Shown here: positions 22,295 through 37,553 of the stretch, piece after piece
Layout of the letters: each line of letters begins with the position of its first letter
Position numbering within the stretch: the first letter of the stretch is position 1
IMG/VR virus record: IMGVR_UViG_3300028840_001395
Location: 124,001-188,000 of that record
Reading direction: 5' to 3' (one strand)
DNA: 64,000 nt
Notes under the pieces: model-generated
The model's database searches: none
What the model was told of the DNA's origin: nothing
What the model saw: only the letters and a program-made list of their open reading frames with translations
Position numbers and translations under genes: made by a program

Positions 22295-22320
22295 CGTATC
22301 TCTCCTTTCCCTTGCCTCAC

Positions 22321-22438
22321 CTAGACTACTCTGGCCCAGGGCGAAATAAGACCCCATCTGAAATAAAAAGTACGCGCCCGCGTAGGCGCTTTTTTCGCGC
22401 GAAAGGGTCTTATCTCGGGCCGGGACAGAGTAGTCTAG
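22321..22438. promoter_or_regulatory. Back-to-back divergent class I promoters forming a ~38-bp inverted repeat
   Basis: Minus copy 22321-22352 and plus copy 22407-22438, both GTCTTAT-N14-GAGTAGTCTAG; marks the minus-to-plus gene-orientation switch. Confidence 0.8.
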
Positions 22439-22632
22439 GTGGAACGAGAGGTGCCTCCCGCATCGACCCCCGGCGGGAAGGGAAGGCGCTCCTCCGACGT
22501 AGCTGGGATAGCCTGTATCGCGTCCCGCGTTAGGCTGTCCTGGCAGAAGGCCTGCGGAGGGGAAGGGGGCTAGCATTACACGGGGGCTCACCAAGTCCCC
22601 GATAGCGTAGAAGGGTCAGAACGGAGGAAGCT

Positions 22633-30696: not shown

Positions 30697-30843
30697 CTAT
30701 CCACCGAAGATGAACCGACACCACCCGATATTTGCATGGTAAATAGCGATTATTACAGGGAACACTACACTTAACTTTCGACCCCCTGCAAGCTCATCTA
30801 AGTGCCTTGTAACCCCCACTTCAGCTCGACATCGTCTTGAGGG

Positions 30844-30875
30844 GGCTTACCCGTAGGTCCAATGGAGTAGTCTAG
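30844..30875 (+). promoter_or_regulatory. Class I bipartite phage promoter motif
   Basis: GGCTTAC-N14-GAGTAGTCTAG. Confidence 0.78.
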
Positions 30876-30921
30876 CCGGAGGACGTGAGATGGACTTCAC
30901 TGGCTACCCCTGGGACATCAC

Positions 30922-31689
30922 ATGAGGGTCAGAGAACTCAACCAGGCATTCATGACCTTCAGGAAGCTCCTCCGGGCTGCCGAAGCCGACGAGACGCTCG
31001 ATGAGGGCACCCGCGCCAACATCCCCGAAGTCAAGGAGTCCTTCAAGGACATCCTGAAAGAGATGAGCGACCAGCGCCGGGAGATCCAGAAAGAGGCCCG
31101 CGAAGAGGAACAACAGGTCATCGATGATGCCACCGAAGAGATCAAGCGGGTGACCGAGAACCTCAAGTGGTACCTGGGCACCATCGACTGCCCCCGATGC
31201 TGGGGTTCCGGCATGGATACCGTCGCCGTCCTCGGAGAACACACGACCGACATCGAGATCGACCCCGAGGAGGCCCGAAGCCTGACCTCGCTGGCCAAGA
31301 TCATCGAGTGGGTACACGACCACCGGAAAGACCCCACGGTCGCACCCGTCTACGAGAAGATGAACCGACGCTGCCAGCTCTGTGAGGGCAAGCTCCGCCT
31401 GCCTCGCAACTTCGACGTGCCCCTCGACAGCGCCATCAAGGGCTGCTGGATCTACCGGAAGAACGCAGGCTCCCTCCGCATGAGGAAGGACGCCCCCGAA
31501 GCCTTCACCAAGCCCCTGGTCGAAGCCGGACTACTCAAGCCCTCCGAGGCTGGAACTGGCATCCTCTTTTTCACCCAGGAGTTCCGGGACAAGCACCTGG
31601 AGAAGGTCGCTCCGGGGAAGTCCAACCTGCAAATCGGGGACGACTACTACTGCCTCGACAGGACATCGCTCAACAAGGAGACACCGTGA
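30922..31689 (+). CDS. Coiled-coil + CxxCxGxG zinc-finger hypothetical protein
   Basis: CPRCWGSG ... CQLCEG; N-terminal helical region. Confidence 0.65.
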   Translation: MRVRELNQAFMTFRKLLRAAEADETLDEGTRANIPEVKESFKDILKEMSDQRREIQKEAREEEQQVIDDATEEIKRVTENLKWYLGTIDCPRCWGSGMDTVAVLGEHTTDIEIDPEEARSLTSLAKIIEWVHDHRKDPTVAPVYEKMNRRCQLCEGKLRLPRNFDVPLDSAIKGCWIYRKNAGSLRMRKDAPEAFTKPLVEAGLLKPSEAGTGILFFTQEFRDKHLEKVAPGKSNLQIGDDYYCLDRTSLNKETP

Positions 31690-31982
31690 GCCAGAACCCA
31701 ACCCTCATCATCAAGGGGAGCCACTACCCCCTCCAGGTCTATCACCACATCAAGAAGGGCTGGCAGCGCATGACCGTCGTGCGAGTCACCTTCGATGGCA
31801 GCCTCGCCAGCCAGAAGAAGGCAATCTTCTCGGCACCTGGGAAGGGGAAGATCGTCCTCCACGGGATGAACGCCAACTACGACGCCGCCGTCGAACTCCT
31901 CATGGGCGAGATCCAGAAGGCTTTGAGCGACGGTCGCCTCGTCTGCCGGGACAACCAGACCCGGCTGGACTTCCCGGCATGA
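31686..31982 (+). CDS. Hypothetical protein
   Basis: GTGA overlap, AAGGAG RBS. Confidence 0.55.
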   Translation: MSQNPTLIIKGSHYPLQVYHHIKKGWQRMTVVRVTFDGSLASQKKAIFSAPGKGKIVLHGMNANYDAAVELLMGEIQKALSDGRLVCRDNQTRLDFPA

Positions 31983-32485
31983 GCTTCCCCGAACGACATC
32001 AGACCATCCACGTCAACTACCGAGGCTCCTACATCGTGGTCAAGGTCAAGCGGGAACTGGACGACCGCAGTTGGGGCATCCTCACCACCTGCGAAGCACA
32101 CTTCGACCGCCACTGCGAGAAGTGCCACAAGCCCGGCAACGGGGGACTCGTCCTCCGAGCCACGTCGGACCGGGGCCTGAGCTTCACGCTCCAAGACCTC
32201 ATGAACAAGGTCAAGGAGGCCATGCGGAAGAAGCGCCTCGCCTTCAACGACCAGAGCGACGACAAGACCCCCAAGGGCTTCTACGTGCCGACCGTGCCCC
32301 CTATCATGTGCATGGACTGCACCCACTGGCCCCACGACAAGGCCAAGCGCCCCGTCTACGACTGGCACCCGGCTACGTGCCCCGGTGGCGCGGACATGAA
32401 CATCTTCGACGGCCAGCCCTACCTGCGAGCCGAATACGACGCCTCCGACTGCGAGCACTTCGCGGAGCGGGAGCGGAAGAAGTGA
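31979..32485 (+). CDS. Cys-rich hypothetical protein
   Basis: CxxxxxxxCxxC and CxxCxHW motifs. Confidence 0.6.
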   Translation: MSFPERHQTIHVNYRGSYIVVKVKRELDDRSWGILTTCEAHFDRHCEKCHKPGNGGLVLRATSDRGLSFTLQDLMNKVKEAMRKKRLAFNDQSDDKTPKGFYVPTVPPIMCMDCTHWPHDKAKRPVYDWHPATCPGGADMNIFDGQPYLRAEYDASDCEHFAERERKK

Positions 32486-34092: not shown

Positions 34093-34751
34093 GGAAGAAA
34101 AAAGGCCCCTTGTCTATATAAAGGCCCCTCCCCTGAGAGCATACTTCTTTAACTTTCATCAATGTTTGCAAACTTCGGCCCCCCATAGCCCCCAAAGAAC
34201 CCGTTTCGGATTCGGAAGTGAGATTTTCAGTACAACTTCAATTTGAGATTTTTGACTACCGACCCCCTCTCGAAAAGTTTTTTATCCGGTTTTCACACCC
34301 CTCCCCCTACCTACCCCACCAGTCCTCCCCCTGGTAACGCGAGAGATCCATGACGCCTCACCACGAAGTTGTCAAACTTCGCCTCACATGTTATACTCAA
34401 TGTTTCACCTAGACCCATAGTAAGCAAACTCGTAGTCAGCCCAGCCCCAGGTTTCATTACTTCGGGCAGCCGGGCTCAATCTTTGGGGCTGTCGGGTCGT
34501 GTGAGGTCGGCTTGGGTCGGCGCGGGTTGGAGGCTTCGGGAAGAGTCATTCATCTAAGTGGCCTACAAGGGCTGTGTATCTAAGGCTACAGGCGGCCCGA
34601 AACTGCAGGTGGCCGCCTGCCTTAAAACAGACTGGTTTTTCTTGACCCCCCGCTCTCACACGGGGGAGCTACCCCACCCAGGAGGAGGAGTCCTCCTCGT
34701 GTCGCCTGCGGGAAGTGGACGCTGCCCCGGAGACTCTGCGGGGTGGGGTAG
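34093..34751. other. Non-coding AT-rich gap with GC-skew switch; candidate replication origin
   Basis: AT-rich 34130-34300; plus strand C-rich to about 34470, then abruptly G/T-rich. Confidence 0.5.
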
Positions 34752-35789
34752 CTAGGCTTTCGTCTGCCTGCGCCAGTCAGCCGCCACCTGACGGATGAGA
34801 CTCATCCCTCTGCTCACCATGTTCATGCTGACCTGAATCAAGTCCGACAGCTCTGCCCGTGTGTACCCCTCCTCCACATAGGGCAAGAGCCGGAGAGCTA
34901 CCTGACCGTCCCTGGTCTGCTGTACCCGTGGGTCTGCCCGGATGAACTCCACCAAGGCGTTGGCTTCCAGACACTGGGCCTGACTGGGCTCCTGGCACCC
35001 TGTAGGGTTCGACAGGAGACTCGCACCCGAAGCCACGTCCACAGAGGTCAGGTCACCATGATCCCAGCCCGGTGCCCCTACCTGCTCGACAGCCCTCCGC
35101 CGGGTCATCCTCCGATGGTAGTTGGCCACGATGCAGCCACAGACCATGTGGACGTAGTGGCCGAAGGAGGACTTCCTGGAGTCCCAAGGGCACCGACCCT
35201 TGTTCCTCGACAGCAGACCCTTGTAGACCTCCTGCAACACGTCCTCGGGGTCATAGCCAGCAGCATAGACCCGCTGACCGAACCCAGCATAGAACAGCTT
35301 CGCCACCTCATGTGACCGATTCACCAGGTCAATACCCAGAGGTTGAGTCGAAGTTACGAAACTCGCGTCCGGCGCAGGGTCGAAGTTTGGAACTTCCGTG
35401 ACCGTGAGGGCCGGGGAAGTTTCGATAGGCATCCCGGAGGGCGTAGTTGCGAGGTCATCGGGAAGAAAGAGGTCGAGAGCGGGTACTATGGGTTGGTTGT
35501 GAGCGAGGGTGAGGCTTGGGGGGGCATGGCGGCCTGTCTTGAAGTATCGGTCGAAGGTCCAGTTGCGAGCGTTGGGGTGGCCGGTGATGGCGATGAGCAA
35601 CTGGCGTGCTGACGTGAAGGTCTGGACGGGGCCTCCCCCTGAAGCCAGGGAGGGTCGGAGTTGGAAGTCCCCGTCCGGTGTCAGAATCACTTTGTCTGCA
35701 CCATCCCTCCACCGACTGTAGAGATACTTCGACTTCGCAGTGCGGGTGCCTTCGCTTCGTTTTGCGCGAAGGTTTGACTTTCCGGGCAT
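34752..35789 (-). CDS. ECF-like sigma70-family sigma factor with N-terminal extension
   Basis: Region-2-like DPEDVLQEVYKGLL...WDSRKSSFGHYVHMVCGCIVANYHRR; region-4-like GYTRAELSDLIQVSMNMVSRGM. Confidence 0.65.
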   Translation of the reverse strand: MPGKSNLRAKRSEGTRTAKSKYLYSRWRDGADKVILTPDGDFQLRPSLASGGGPVQTFTSARQLLIAITGHPNARNWTFDRYFKTGRHAPPSLTLAHNQPIVPALDLFLPDDLATTPSGMPIETSPALTVTEVPNFDPAPDASFVTSTQPLGIDLVNRSHEVAKLFYAGFGQRVYAAGYDPEDVLQEVYKGLLSRNKGRCPWDSRKSSFGHYVHMVCGCIVANYHRRMTRRRAVEQVGAPGWDHGDLTSVDVASGASLLSNPTGCQEPSQAQCLEANALVEFIRADPRVQQTRDGQVALRLLPYVEEGYTRAELSDLIQVSMNMVSRGMSLIRQVAADWRRQTKA

Positions 35790-35954
35790 CCCCTGACCCC
35801 CTTCGGTCTAGCGACCCTCCGTTTTATGGCACGTCATTCATTTGCTCCCTCTACCATTCCTACGGATAGGGCGTTGGGCTGTCAAGAAATACGGTGTCAT
35901 CCGGGTGGGGTTTTTTGTCGCGTGGGGGTATCTTGGGCGTATGGAGGTGCATGG

Positions 35955-36267: not shown

Positions 36268-37020
36268 CTATGATACCCCACTGGACGCTTGTGCGGGTGG
36301 GCAGGCCATGAATTTCAGGGTGTCGTGTATATGCAGGGCGATGGAGTCTGCGTCGTGGGTGATCTTGTTGAGGTCATATCTGCCCGTGTCGGTGACGATG
36401 GGGCTGTGGAGGTAGAAGATGACGGCCATGTCAGTGGTGTCGGTGTCTTGGACTTCGAGCACCCAGGGCAGATGAGGGCCTCCGTATCGTCTATCGATGC
36501 AGCGGGCGATGACGTAGAGGGCCAGGATGGAGGCCGAAGTCATCCAGATGCCGAAGGGGTGCTTGCCGTGTCCACAGCAGGACTCGAAGGTCTTGATGCC
36601 GGGTACGTGGTTGAGGGCGTCACAGAGCCTTCGGCACTCGGGGTCGAAGTCGGGGTCGTGGTGATAGTCGAATCGGCCCCCCTGGGGGCTGGCCATTTGG
36701 AGGCCGTGGTCACGGCGTAGTTGCAGATGGAGCTTGTAGAGCCACGCTCGGTCAATGGCGTTGAACGTGGTGCTGGGAGCGTCGTCTTGGTGCTCCAGTA
36801 GGAAGTCGAGTCCGTTGCGGGTCATCCTGTAGCTGTAGGGGCCTCTGTCTCCCCAGTCTCCTTTGCCTGTTCTCATGAGGCATCCTCTGTCGTGGAGGCT
36901 CTTGAGGGCGGCGGAGACTTTCCGGGTTGGGAGGTTGAGCTTCTGGGCGAGGCTTCGGGCTTCGATGGCCGTGTCCAGGGCCGACAGTGCGAGGAGGACT
37001 TGTTCTTGTAGGGGGGTCAT
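36268..37020 (-). CDS. Winged-helix protein fused to a SCCGH-containing domain
   Basis: N-terminal ARSLAQKLNLPTRKVSAALKSLHDRG wHTH; C-terminal LN..PGIKTFESCCGH. Confidence 0.65.
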   Translation of the reverse strand: MTPLQEQVLLALSALDTAIEARSLAQKLNLPTRKVSAALKSLHDRGCLMRTGKGDWGDRGPYSYRMTRNGLDFLLEHQDDAPSTTFNAIDRAWLYKLHLQLRRDHGLQMASPQGGRFDYHHDPDFDPECRRLCDALNHVPGIKTFESCCGHGKHPFGIWMTSASILALYVIARCIDRRYGGPHLPWVLEVQDTDTTDMAVIFYLHSPIVTDTGRYDLNKITHDADSIALHIHDTLKFMACPPAQASSGVS

Positions 37021-37023
37021 GTG

Positions 37024-37254
37024 CTAGGGGCCTCCCGTGATGGTCGCGCCACCGGGCGCACCCGCGCTAGGGGCATCGCCGTCGAGGTTGATGGACAGGG
37101 CTTCTTGGATACCGAGGGCGATGAGGTTGACCACGGCGTCAGTTCGGGAGACGTGTTTCCCTGGCCCTGCGTGAGCTTGGAGTCTGGCCTGGTGGAATTC
37201 GATATCCCGTAGCAGTGGTTCGGGGATACGGACGGTGACTTGCTTGGTGCTCAT
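37024..37254 (-). CDS. Ribbon-helix-helix (Arc/CopG-like) DNA-binding protein
   Basis: KQVTVRIPEPLLRDI...VSRTDAVVNLI. Confidence 0.7.
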   Translation of the reverse strand: MSTKQVTVRIPEPLLRDIEFHQARLQAHAGPGKHVSRTDAVVNLIALGIQEALSINLDGDAPSAGAPGGATITGGP

Positions 37255-37373: not shown

Positions 37374-37553
37374 TCACTTTTTCTTGGTCTGGCGCTTCTT
37401 GGCGACCTTGAGGTGGGTCTTGCAGAGCTTCTGGCCCTTGGCCTTGGGGCGTGTACAGCGCCGGGTCTTGTTCCCGTAGGCGGGCATGGGTATCTGCCAG
37501 GTACAGCGATCCTTGTTGGCGGGCAGGCTCCGACTCTCCGTGTAACCACTCAT
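37374..37553 (-). CDS. Small basic CCCH zinc-finger protein (59 aa, absent from ORF track)
   Basis: MSGYTESR...RCTW...RRCTRP...LCKTH...KKK; GGGAGG RBS. Confidence 0.6.
   Translation of the reverse strand: MSGYTESRSLPANKDRCTWQIPMPAYGNKTRRCTRPKAKGQKLCKTHLKVAKKRQTKKK

What the first reader, a model, noticed from the sequence alone, without database searches (positions are those of the whole stretch)
34752..35789. Phage sigma-factor-like protein with an unexplained ~170-aa N-terminal extension
Seen: C-terminal region-2-like and region-4-like segments, preceded by an ~85-aa globular domain and a Pro/Thr-rich linker. A perfect TTGACA (35880-35885, minus strand) lies upstream, though its -10 element is weak. 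Established: ECF sigmas usually consist of regions 2 and 4 only. Inference: the extra domain may be a regulatory or DNA-binding module, possibly linked to the adjacent origin-like gap.
Basis: partly seen in the sequence, partly recalled or inferred. Interest (0 to 1): 0.6.

Follow-up and report, generated by a model that had tools for sequence, protein, structure and literature searches.

The report
Huge-phage sigma factor with novel N-domain
A 436-kb bacteriophage encodes a very divergent ECF-like sigma factor that carries a conserved, previously undescribed N-terminal domain on a flexible tether, and it probably redirects the host RNA polymerase to about 59 phage-specific promoters in front of non-structural genes.

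Summary
The ORF (34752-35789, minus, 345 aa) is real and lies in a complete 435.8-kb phage genome. Its C-terminal 200 residues form sigma2 and sigma4 domains: every top structural match is a sigma factor (Z 7-10 per domain), and a family profile hits a solved sigma-H at E 1e-5. Curated Pfam/NCBIfam cut-offs are not reached. The N-terminal extension is genuine. It consists of a ~70-aa basic beta-sheet-plus-helix domain found only in this family (219 clusters at 50% identity), then a Pro/Thr/Leu-rich disordered linker with a conserved hydrophobic-acidic motif (ALDLF). No known fold or family explains the domain. Five phage genomes with this sigma each carry 20-60 copies of a bipartite motif with identical geometry and a shared nnGTAn core (here GCTTAT-N17-TAGTCT, ~59 sites upstream of ADP-ribosylation and ligase genes, absent from virion blocks). 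The -35-like part varies, as does the sigma4 helix. That fits this sigma reading them, but it is not proven. A link to an origin is not supported. This is a new variant of a known kind.

The parts
34752..35789 (-). Whole ORF, 345 aa (P0001): N-domain, linker, sigma2, sigma4
   Evidence: at least 771 full-length homologues
35730..35789 (-). Residues 1-20: poorly conserved basic N-terminal tail, low pLDDT
35520..35729 (-). Residues 21-90: family-specific N-domain (4 beta-strands plus helix, then the R-N-W-T-F-D-R-Y-F segment; invariant L64 T69 R75 W77 R81 F83); net basic
   Evidence: no known fold
35343..35519 (-). Residues 91-149: disordered Pro/Thr/Leu/Val-rich linker of variable length (8-144 aa in the family)
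35466..35480 (-). Residues 104-108 ALDLF: conserved hydrophobic-acidic short linear motif about 15-20 residues after the N-domain
   Evidence: 57% strict, 76% relaxed, against 4% in shuffled linkers
35082..35342 (-). Residues 150-236: sigma2 domain (regions 2.1-2.4; DVLQEVYKGLL and KSSFGHYVHMVCGC..NYHR nearly invariant)
34983..35081 (-). Residues 237-269: conserved beta-hairpin (EQxGxxG...DVAS), then a variable disordered inter-domain linker; no sigma3 domain
34755..34982 (-). Residues 270-345: sigma4 domain with HTH (recognition helix MNMVSRGMSLIRQ)
35856..35885 (-). Promoter of the sigma gene: TTGACA-N17-TAGGAAT, host sigma70-like, conserved in four lineages
30842..30878 (+). Nearest copy of the phage-specific promoter class (GGGGCTTAc..-N-..GGAGTAGTCTAG), 56 nt before ORF 30922-31689
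22318..22354 (-). High-scoring phage-specific promoter, one half of a divergent pair
22405..22441 (+). High-scoring phage-specific promoter, other half of the divergent pair

Best explanation
The gene encodes a phage sigma factor of the two-domain, ECF-like type. Shown: it has sigma2 and sigma4 folds joined without a sigma3 domain, and it belongs to a large family carried by huge phages. Inferred, step 1: the gene is transcribed soon after infection by the host holoenzyme from its conserved TTGACA-N17-TAGGAAT promoter. Inferred, step 2: the protein binds host core RNA polymerase, since Pfam detects no phage-encoded beta/beta' subunit. Inferred, step 3: it directs the polymerase to a phage-specific promoter class, GCTTAT-N17-TAGTCT with a GAG 'extended -10', about 59 copies, in front of non-structural (early/middle-type) genes. 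The near-invariant sigma2 would read the shared nnGTAn core and the variable sigma4 helix would read the lineage-specific -35-like element. The N-terminal module is a family-specific accessory added to, not replacing, the sigma core. It is a small basic domain on a long flexible tether that also carries a hydrophobic-acidic linear motif. My best guess is that it makes an extra contact that strengthens or gates promoter complex formation. That contact would most likely be with nucleic acid near the promoter or with the host polymerase, with the linker motif as a second docking site. The partner is unknown.
For: Sigma identity: profile hit to sigma-H 3mzy at E 9.6e-6 spanning both domains. The Foldseek top hits are almost all sigma factors, ECF types first (prob up to 0.99). 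Per-domain Z is 7-10 and all 50 listed rows are sigma or sigma-like proteins. Some family members hit Sigma70_ECF or Sigma70_r2, and JGI names about ten members sigma24. Dependence on host RNAP: no Rpb2_6 or Rpb1_2 hit in the complete genome. Own promoter: TTGACA-N17-TAGGAAT / TAAGAAT / TAGGAA is conserved in the window, L096, L094 and L007 despite diverged spacers, and TTGAC lies within 200 nt upstream in 11 of 17 family loci. Target promoters: AGTAGTCT occurs 32 times upstream against 1.4 expected, and a PWM finds 59 sites, oriented toward genes and 22-30 nt before start codons. The same geometry, with the -35-like pentamer at -19 from nnGTAn, holds in five genomes with N-domain sigmas: 55/61, 50/52, 63/66, 36 and 21 sites. 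Sigma2.3-2.4 is nearly invariant, while the sigma4 helix varies as the -35 does. G000 and G005 (both CTTA-type) are about 43% identical in sigma4, against about 17% for G001 (ATCAT-type), at similar overall identity. P0001 is the only sigma2+sigma4 ORF detected in the genome. Regulon: PARP-like ART, ADP-ribosylglycohydrolase and NAD ligase are promoter-driven; the portal, TerL and baseplate blocks lack the motif. N-domain: confident fold (pLDDT 85, pTM 0.72), exclusive to this family, net basic in 165 of 187 members.
Against: Curated family thresholds are not met for this protein (Pfam 14.9 against 21.1 bits; TIGR02937 16.2 against 42.9). No direct evidence of core binding or expression exists: only DNA metagenome runs hold the locus. 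The sigma-promoter link is correlative, with five genomes and qualitative co-variation. A 201-aa protein with two sigma4-type HTHs (71% conserved in G005) and a 390-aa protein with a sigma4-like C-terminus are alternative -35 readers. The Pfam search for Sigma70_r2 did not detect P0001 itself, so other divergent sigmas could be hidden. Very divergent phiKZ-type RNAP subunits might also escape the Pfam models. My gene calls are crude (GC3-based), and the PWM was trained on the same genome. The function of the N-domain is a guess: no fold match is above noise, and no extra conserved promoter element upstream of the -35 region was seen beyond a G-run.
Confidence: 0.6

Rival explanations
1. The protein is a sigma factor, but the abundant GCTTAT-N17-TAGTCT promoters are read by something else. 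Candidates are the host primary sigma remodelled by a phage appropriator, or the conserved double-sigma4 201-aa protein. This sigma would then control a different, smaller or later regulon.
For: Other sigma4-like proteins exist and are conserved. The geometry -35 hexamer-N17-TAGnnn keeps the T and A of a sigma70 -10, and the sigma gene's own promoter has the same geometry with TTGACA. The sigma-promoter link is only correlative.
Against: The -35-like element differs among related phages (CTTAT, ATCAT, CTTAC, GTAAC, TCAAC). Host sigma region 4.2 specificity, by contrast, is conserved across bacteria (established knowledge). The N-domain sigma is the only sigma2+sigma4 protein shared by all five genomes, and its sigma4 helix varies alongside the -35 elements.
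Confidence: 0.25
2. The N-terminal module is an autoinhibitory or pro-sequence element: it masks sigma2/sigma4 or blocks DNA contact until it is cleaved or displaced. This would resemble BldN (ECF121) or M. tuberculosis SigC (ECF36).
For: The only characterised ECF N-terminal extensions act this way (PMC7826278). A long flexible linker would allow fold-back. No anti-sigma gene is evident nearby, so regulation in cis is plausible.
Against: AF2 does not dock the N-domain or the linker motif on the sigma core (pTM 0.37, linker pLDDT <50). The domain is basic, not an acidic DNA mimic. No protease partner or cleavage motif was identified.
Confidence: 0.2
3. The linker motif (I/V)(L/F)(D/E)LF is a sliding-clamp-binding motif. 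The sigma-RNAP complex would be tethered to a DNA-loaded clamp (the host beta clamp), coupling transcription to replication as in T4 gp55/gp33/gp45 or phage Mu MuC.
For: The motif is hydrophobic and acidic, sits on a variable unstructured linker, and is conserved in position. T4 gp55 has exactly such an epitope on such a linker (PMC2988020). Mu is reported to enlist the host beta clamp for late transcription (PMC12867686). The motif resembles the bacterial QL[SD]LF consensus (from my own knowledge).
Against: Pfam finds no clamp gene in the phage. The motif is internal, not terminal, and lacks the leading Q in most members. The associated promoters drive non-structural genes rather than late genes. 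The complex prediction gave no answer and counts neither way.
Confidence: 0.1
4. The protein is not a functional sigma. It would be a sigma-fold DNA-binding regulator or decoy, in the way that PhyR uses a sigma-like domain as an anti-anti-sigma, and it would not bind core RNAP.
For: It falls below curated sigma family thresholds. Many members hit only generic HTH models. PhyR appears among the structural matches (row 38).
Against: The region 2.2-like core-binding segment (DVLQEVYKGLL) and the region 2.3/2.4-like segment are the most conserved parts of the family. Both domains match sigma structures in DNA- and RNAP-bound states. The phage lacks its own RNAP yet has a non-host promoter class.
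Confidence: 0.07

Closest known systems
Group 4 (ECF) sigma factors, e.g. E. coli sigmaE, M. tuberculosis SigH/SigD/SigK, and the F. nucleatum 'sigma-H' structure 3mzy
   Same: Two-domain sigma2-sigma4 architecture without sigma3 or region 1.1. It is the best sequence-profile and structural match. The F..(W/Y)...I..N-type region 2.3/2.4 pattern is shared.
   Different: It falls below curated Pfam/NCBIfam cut-offs. It has an insertion (RNxGxCPWD) in sigma2 and a conserved beta-hairpin after sigma2. It has a ~150-aa N-terminal module with a new domain and no nearby anti-sigma. It is phage-encoded. The putative promoter (GCTTAT-N17-TAGTCT) is unlike the usual ECF AAC/CGT-type motifs (the latter from my own knowledge).
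Sigma factors of RNAP-less 'group 2' jumbo phages (Iyer et al. 2021, PMC7824862)
   Same: Huge phage without its own RNAP that encodes sigma-type factors, presumably to recruit host core polymerase.
   Different: That survey describes a minimal single-HTH form and RpoD-like forms. It describes neither an ECF-like sigma2-sigma4 protein with this N-domain, nor a T4-like replication set (no PolB or gp45 here).
T4 gp55 (late sigma) with its clamp-binding epitope
   Same: Highly divergent phage sigma with a short hydrophobic-acidic motif on a variable unstructured linker (PMC2988020).
   Different: gp55 has only a sigma2-like domain and a C-terminal epitope, needs gp33 and gp45, and serves late genes. 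Here sigma4 is present, the motif is internal and N-terminal to sigma2, no phage clamp was found, and the associated promoters precede non-structural genes.
ECF sigmas with N-terminal extensions: BldN (ECF121), SigC (ECF36), sigmaR' (ECF12)
   Same: Extra N-terminal sequence on an ECF core (PMC7826278).
   Different: Those extensions are generally short and are not reported as independently folded domains. They act as a pro-sequence, a DNA-contact inhibitor or a degradation tag. Here there is a confidently folded, conserved ~70-aa domain plus a ~60-aa tether.
Region 1.1 of primary sigma factors
   Same: N-terminal small domain tethered by a flexible linker to region 1.2/2.
   Different: Region 1.1 is helical and acidic (established knowledge). 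This domain is beta-rich and basic.

Membership tests
Sigma-70 family, group 4 (ECF-like) | sigma2 domain fold (regions 2.1-2.4) | tested here: met
   Model res 149-236 aligns to sigmaE region 2 on -10 DNA (Z 8.0, 79 aa, 2.7 A), RpoE (Z 7.9) and SigK (Z 7.5). The profile alignment to 3mzy starts in region 2.2.
Sigma-70 family, group 4 (ECF-like) | sigma4 domain fold with HTH (regions 4.1-4.2) | tested here: met
   3mzy Z 9.9; CnrH Z 8.7; SigD sigma4 Z 8.2 (1.7 A); sigmaE region 4 on -35 DNA Z 7.9.
Sigma-70 family, group 4 (ECF-like) | Score above the curated family threshold (Pfam Sigma70_ECF/r2/r4; NCBIfam TIGR02937) | tested here: not met
   14.9 against 21.1 bits and 16.2 against 42.9 bits. 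Only 5-6 of 32 members hit sigma models at E<0.01.
Sigma-70 family, group 4 (ECF-like) | No sigma3 domain and no region 1.1 | tested here: met
   Residues 237-269 are a beta-hairpin plus a disordered stretch. The N-domain is beta-rich and basic, unlike region 1.1.
Sigma-70 family, group 4 (ECF-like) | Binds core RNA polymerase (beta' coiled-coil, beta flap) | not tested
The host is unknown. This needs biochemistry or AF-multimer with core subunits.
Sigma-70 family, group 4 (ECF-like) | Directs initiation at a cognate -35/-10 promoter | tested here: inconclusive
   A bipartite motif with sigma70-family spacing is present in five genomes carrying the family. The -35 varies as the sigma4 helix does, and the -10 core and sigma2 are both conserved. 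This is correlative only.
Sigma-70 family, group 4 (ECF-like) | Co-encoded anti-sigma factor (typical, not universal) | tested here: not met
   Neighbours give only weak wHTH/RHH hits, and there is no conserved synteny.
T4 gp55-type clamp-activated sigma | Hydrophobic-acidic clamp-binding epitope on a flexible linker | tested here: inconclusive
   A motif of that character is present and conserved, but it is internal. The complex test with E. coli beta gave no answer.
T4 gp55-type clamp-activated sigma | Phage-encoded sliding clamp / T4-like replisome | tested here: not met
   No gp45-slide_C, DNA_pol3_beta (N or C), DNA_pol_B or DNA_pol3_alpha hits in the complete genome.
T4 gp55-type clamp-activated sigma | Serves late (virion) genes | tested here: not met
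   The promoter class is absent from the portal, terminase and baseplate blocks and present before ART, glycohydrolase and ligase genes.
Pro-sigma / autoinhibited ECF (BldN, SigC type) | N-terminal extension that is cleaved or masks DNA contact | not testable with these tools
   AF2 shows no docking of the N-module on the core, which is weak evidence against. Cleavage cannot be assessed in silico.
Primary-sigma region 1.1 | Acidic helical N-terminal domain | tested here: not met
   Four strands plus a helix; net charge median +3, positive in 165 of 187 members.

The most novel reading that the evidence does not exclude
The N-domain and the conserved ALDLF-type linker motif form a two-point tether that couples this sigma-RNAP holoenzyme to a DNA-bound host machine such as the beta sliding clamp or replisome. 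Transcription of huge-phage middle genes would then be licensed by replication or DNA entry. This would be an independent, internally placed reinvention of the T4 gp55/gp45 principle that uses the host clamp.
Probability: 0.08. Interest if true: 0.8.

Novelty: new variant of a known kind. Interest (0 to 1): 0.55.

Why it matters
Huge phages without their own RNA polymerase must reprogramme the host enzyme, and how they do so is largely unknown. This protein defines a large, widespread family: at least 771 sequences, and 219 clusters at 50% identity for the N-domain alone. It is an ECF-like sigma fused to a domain found nowhere else. It comes with a concrete, testable set of candidate target promoters in several genomes, in which the -35-like element and the sigma4 helix both vary. 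If confirmed, it would supply orthogonal sigma/promoter pairs for synthetic biology and a handle on the temporal programme of huge phages. It would also be a new example of how accessory domains are grafted onto minimal sigma factors, which is rare at the N-terminus.

Tried and rejected
1. N-domain identity. Pfam on 19 members, a PDB sequence profile, Foldseek PDB, VIA-align on 48k chains (best Z 4.9: MPND/SAND, YkuJ, CcrM C-terminal domain), BFVD, ESM Atlas shape search (best DUF2924, TM 0.60 over 60 aa) and Atlas feature search all gave nothing above noise.
2. Stand-alone or differently fused N-domains. The exhaustive profile search found essentially only the sigma fusion. Short hits are truncated or frameshifted fragments. 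Giant repeat proteins match only the beta-hairpin part.
3. Clamp binding. Complex prediction of residues 90-125 with E. coli beta gave 'no answer' (score 0.02) and is not evidence either way.
4. Phage RNAP, clamp, PolB and Pol III alpha. No Pfam hits in the genome.
5. Conserved gene neighbourhood. None in 67 loci.
6. Exact -10 block CAGAGTAGTCTAGGTG across IMG/VR. Only 7 single hits. AGAGTAGTC is rare in relatives, so motifs are lineage-specific and had to be found de novo per genome.
7. Rfam in the flanking gaps. Only a sub-threshold sraL hit, taken as chance.
8. Expression data. Only DNA metagenome runs hold the locus.
9. PHROGs for the protein itself. No meaningful hit.
10. Origin-of-replication reading of the gaps. 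No iterons or AT-rich unwinding pattern stood out in the repeat scan. Conserved promoters explain the conservation better.

Full report
WHERE IT IS. The window is bases 124001-188000 of a complete 435,804-bp virus record with direct terminal repeats. The same protein is encoded on a 435.6-kb JGI metagenome contig, and DNA runs from sediment and seawater metagenomes hold the locus. The ORF 34752..35789 (-) is 345 aa with an ATG start. It is the last gene of a short minus-strand cluster. A 478-bp gap lies upstream, and a 660-bp gap lies downstream, where it converges on a plus-strand block.

THE SIGMA CORE. Alone, the protein gives only sub-threshold hits to Sigma70_ECF (14.9 bits, cut-off 21.1) and TIGR02937 (16.2 bits, cut-off 42.9). 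It belongs to a family of at least 771 full-length relatives of 270-390 aa, several on contigs of 350-440 kb, about ten of which JGI names sigma24. A 32-member profile hits the solved 'sigma-H' 3mzy at E 9.6e-6 over regions 2.2 to 4.2. The AF2 model (mean pLDDT 77.5) has three confident domains separated by disordered linkers. The Foldseek top hits are almost all sigma factors, with ECF sigmas first. Re-alignment gives domain-level Z of 7-10: for sigma4, 3mzy 9.9, CnrH 8.7 and SigD 8.2 at 1.7 A; for sigma2, sigmaE region 2 on -10 DNA 8.0, RpoE 7.9 and SigK 7.5. The most conserved stretches are the region 2.2-like DVLQEVYKGLL and the region 2.3/2.4-like KSSFGHYVHMVCGC..NYHR. There is no sigma3 domain; residues 237-251 form a conserved beta-hairpin.

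THE N-TERMINAL MODULE. Residues ~21-90 are as conserved as the sigma core (invariant L64, T69, R75, W77, R81, F83). Folded alone from a 19-sequence alignment built by reference from loci, they give a confident four-strand-plus-helix domain (pLDDT 85, pTM 0.72). An exhaustive profile search of 1.84 billion representatives finds 219 proteins at E<=1e-3. Nearly all are 250-420 aa with the domain at the N-terminus. Short hits are truncated or frameshifted fragments, and a few giant repeat proteins match only the hairpin part. No Pfam, PDB-sequence, PDB-fold, BFVD or Atlas match rises above noise. The domain is net basic in 165 of 187 members, so it is not a region 1.1-like acidic mimic.

The linker (8-144 aa, median 63) is rich in Pro, Leu, Val and Thr and is predicted disordered. 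About 15-20 residues after the domain it carries a hydrophobic-acidic motif (ALDLF, residues 104-108; ILDLF, VFDLF, TLEWF elsewhere). The motif is present in 57% of members under a strict definition and 76% under a relaxed one, against 4% of shuffled linkers. More distant family members of 200-240 aa lack the N-module, and a few have unrelated N-termini. The module is therefore an accretion onto an older phage sigma lineage. According to the ECF reclassification paper, N-terminal extensions are uncommon and generally short, and they are characterised only as a pro-sequence (BldN), a DNA-contact inhibitor (SigC) or an instability tag (sigmaR') (PMC7826278).

THE GENE'S OWN PROMOTER. The same arrangement occurs upstream of homologues at 74% (L096: TTGACA-N17-TAGGAAT), 62% (L094: TTGACA-N17-TAAGAAT) and 42% identity (L007: TTGACA-N17-TAGGAA), with diverged spacers. 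TTGAC lies within 200 nt upstream of 11 of 17 family genes. This footprint argues for transcription by a host-type holoenzyme, which would make it an early gene. That is an inference.

A CANDIDATE REGULON. De novo k-mer enrichment in upstream regions of the whole genome gave a bipartite motif, ggGgCTTAtttc-N11-cAGAGTAGTCTaGGtg. AGTAGTCT occurs 32 times upstream against 1.4 expected, CTTA sits at a fixed offset in 51 of 52 sites, and a PWM finds 59 sites. Sites point toward the downstream gene, lie 22-30 nt before start codons, and often form divergent pairs. The geometry equals a -35 hexamer (GCTTAT), 17 nt and TAGTCT.

The same geometry, with a -35-like pentamer starting at -19 from an nnGTAn core, recurs in every genome I examined that encodes an N-domain homologue:
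- G001: ATCAT / GAGTAG, 50 of 52 sites.
- G005: CTTAC / GCGTAG, 63 of 66 sites.
- G006: GTAAC / (G/C)AGTAG, 36 sites.
- G007: TCAAC / CCGTAT, 21 sites.

Sigma2.3-2.4 is almost invariant among these five proteins, while the sigma4 recognition helix differs. G000 and G005, both with CTTA-type -35 elements, are about 43% identical in sigma4. G001, with ATCAT, is about 17% identical there and has an insertion, at similar overall identity. A genome whose homologue lacks the N-domain (G010) has a 52-copy motif of different organisation.

In G000 the promoter class precedes a PARP-like ADP-ribosyltransferase, an ADP-ribosylglycohydrolase and an NAD-dependent ligase. It is absent from the long blocks holding portal, large terminase and baseplate genes. 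No RNAP beta/beta' homologue is detectable. P0001 is the only two-domain sigma found, although a 201-aa double-sigma4 protein and a 390-aa protein with a sigma4-like end exist and are conserved in G005. Taken together, a cascade from host sigma to this sigma to the phage non-structural promoters is the most economical reading. It remains correlative.

WHAT THE N-MODULE DOES. This is not resolved. I rank the options as follows: an extra contact to nucleic acid or to host polymerase that strengthens or gates promoter complexes; then cis-autoinhibition of the pro-sigma type; then clamp or replisome tethering through the linker motif. The last has literature precedent in the T4 gp55 hydrophobic-acidic epitope on a variable linker (PMC2988020) and in Mu using the host beta clamp (PMC12867686). 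However, the phage has no detectable clamp, the promoters are not late ones, and the one complex prediction with E. coli beta gave no answer.

THE GAPS. The upstream gap holds the promoter described above. The downstream gap is conserved with L096 at about coding level. It contains a conserved sigma70-type promoter on the opposite strand (window 34369-34397, TTGTCA-N17-TATACT; TTGACA in L096) pointing at the 3' end of the sigma gene. The ~360-nt stretch folds only slightly better than shuffles (z -1.9) and matches no Rfam family. Nothing suggests an origin, and the neighbours are not syntenic in 67 related loci.

LIMITS. Gene calls outside JGI's are from a crude GC3 and longest-ORF heuristic, and promoter matrices were trained and scanned on the same genomes. 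The co-variation rests on five genomes. The host is unknown, and no RNA data exist for this locus. The literature search found phage sigma factors of RNAP-less jumbo phages described in general terms (PMC7824862), but nothing on this architecture. Absence from the held library is not proof that it is undescribed.

Noticed in passing
window 1178(-), 11544(-), 14781(-), 18799(-), 21327(-), 22330(-), 22429(+), 25583(+), 28692(+), 30866(+), 49791(-), 58255(-), 63627(-) (position of the A of AGTAGTC); genome-wide about 59 sites: A phage-specific bipartite promoter-like motif, ggGgCTTAtttc-N11-cAGAGTAGTCTaGGtg. It always points at the downstream gene, often forms divergent pairs, and is absent from the virion-gene blocks. 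Homologous motifs with the same spacing occur in four related huge-phage genomes.
   Followed up: yes
window 34093-34751, promoter 34369-34397 (+): The 660-bp gap after the sigma gene is conserved with L096 (and partly L094). It carries a conserved sigma70-type promoter on the opposite strand aimed at the 3' end of the sigma gene. This is a candidate ~350-nt convergent non-coding or antisense transcript ending in hairpins (34667-34753). Fold z is only -1.9 and there is no Rfam match.
   Followed up: partly
window 36268-37020 (-), 37024-37254 (-), 37374-37553 (-): The small cluster upstream on the same strand looks regulatory. It holds a 250-aa protein with a weak N-terminal winged-helix hit (TrmB/MarR), a 76-aa protein with a weak hit to a PHROG annotated as transcriptional repressor, and a 59-aa basic protein with weak WRC and GcrA C-terminal hits. 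None is syntenic with the sigma gene in relatives.
   Followed up: partly
G000 31416-32021 (-) and 63738-64910 (+), outside the window (L072, L073): Two further sigma4-type proteins. One is a 201-aa protein with two Sigma70_r4 HTH domains and no sigma2 (71% identical in G005), sitting inside the packaging/structural block. The other is a 390-aa protein with a weak C-terminal sigma4-like HTH. Both are possible late-gene factors or co-factors.
   Followed up: partly
G000 84941(+), 123871(-), 409663(+), and window 11544 region: A second, host-like promoter class (aaagtgCTTGACA-N16/17-TAnnnT). TTGACA is enriched in intergenic DNA (22 of 88 copies in about 10% of the genome). In two places it lies immediately downstream of a phage-specific promoter, forming tandem promoters.
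   Followed up: partly
L094:342-3542 (-): The 10-kb contig carrying the 62%-identical sigma homologue also encodes a 1066-aa Cas12b/C2c1-like protein (four C2c1 Pfam domains). This looks like a phage-borne type V effector.
   Followed up: no
G000 202813-204486 (+) and 269588-270790 (-) (L205, L209): A PARP-like ADP-ribosyltransferase (PF00644, 59 bits) and an ADP-ribosylglycohydrolase (PF03747, 94 bits), each directly behind a phage-specific promoter. They are candidates for host take-over or counter-defence.
   Followed up: no
G010 (record of L058), 52 sites: A huge phage whose sigma homologue lacks the N-domain has its own very strong 17-nt upstream motif, tGTAACCCCTTATcTATa, followed by ..TGT. 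Its geometry differs from that of the N-domain-sigma phages.
   Followed up: partly
P0125, P0136, P0153, P0173, P0214: Giant proteins (1500-3900 aa) match the beta-hairpin part of the N-domain profile 6-15 times each. This is probably an unrelated hairpin repeat (MORN- or YD-like) rather than homology.
   Followed up: no
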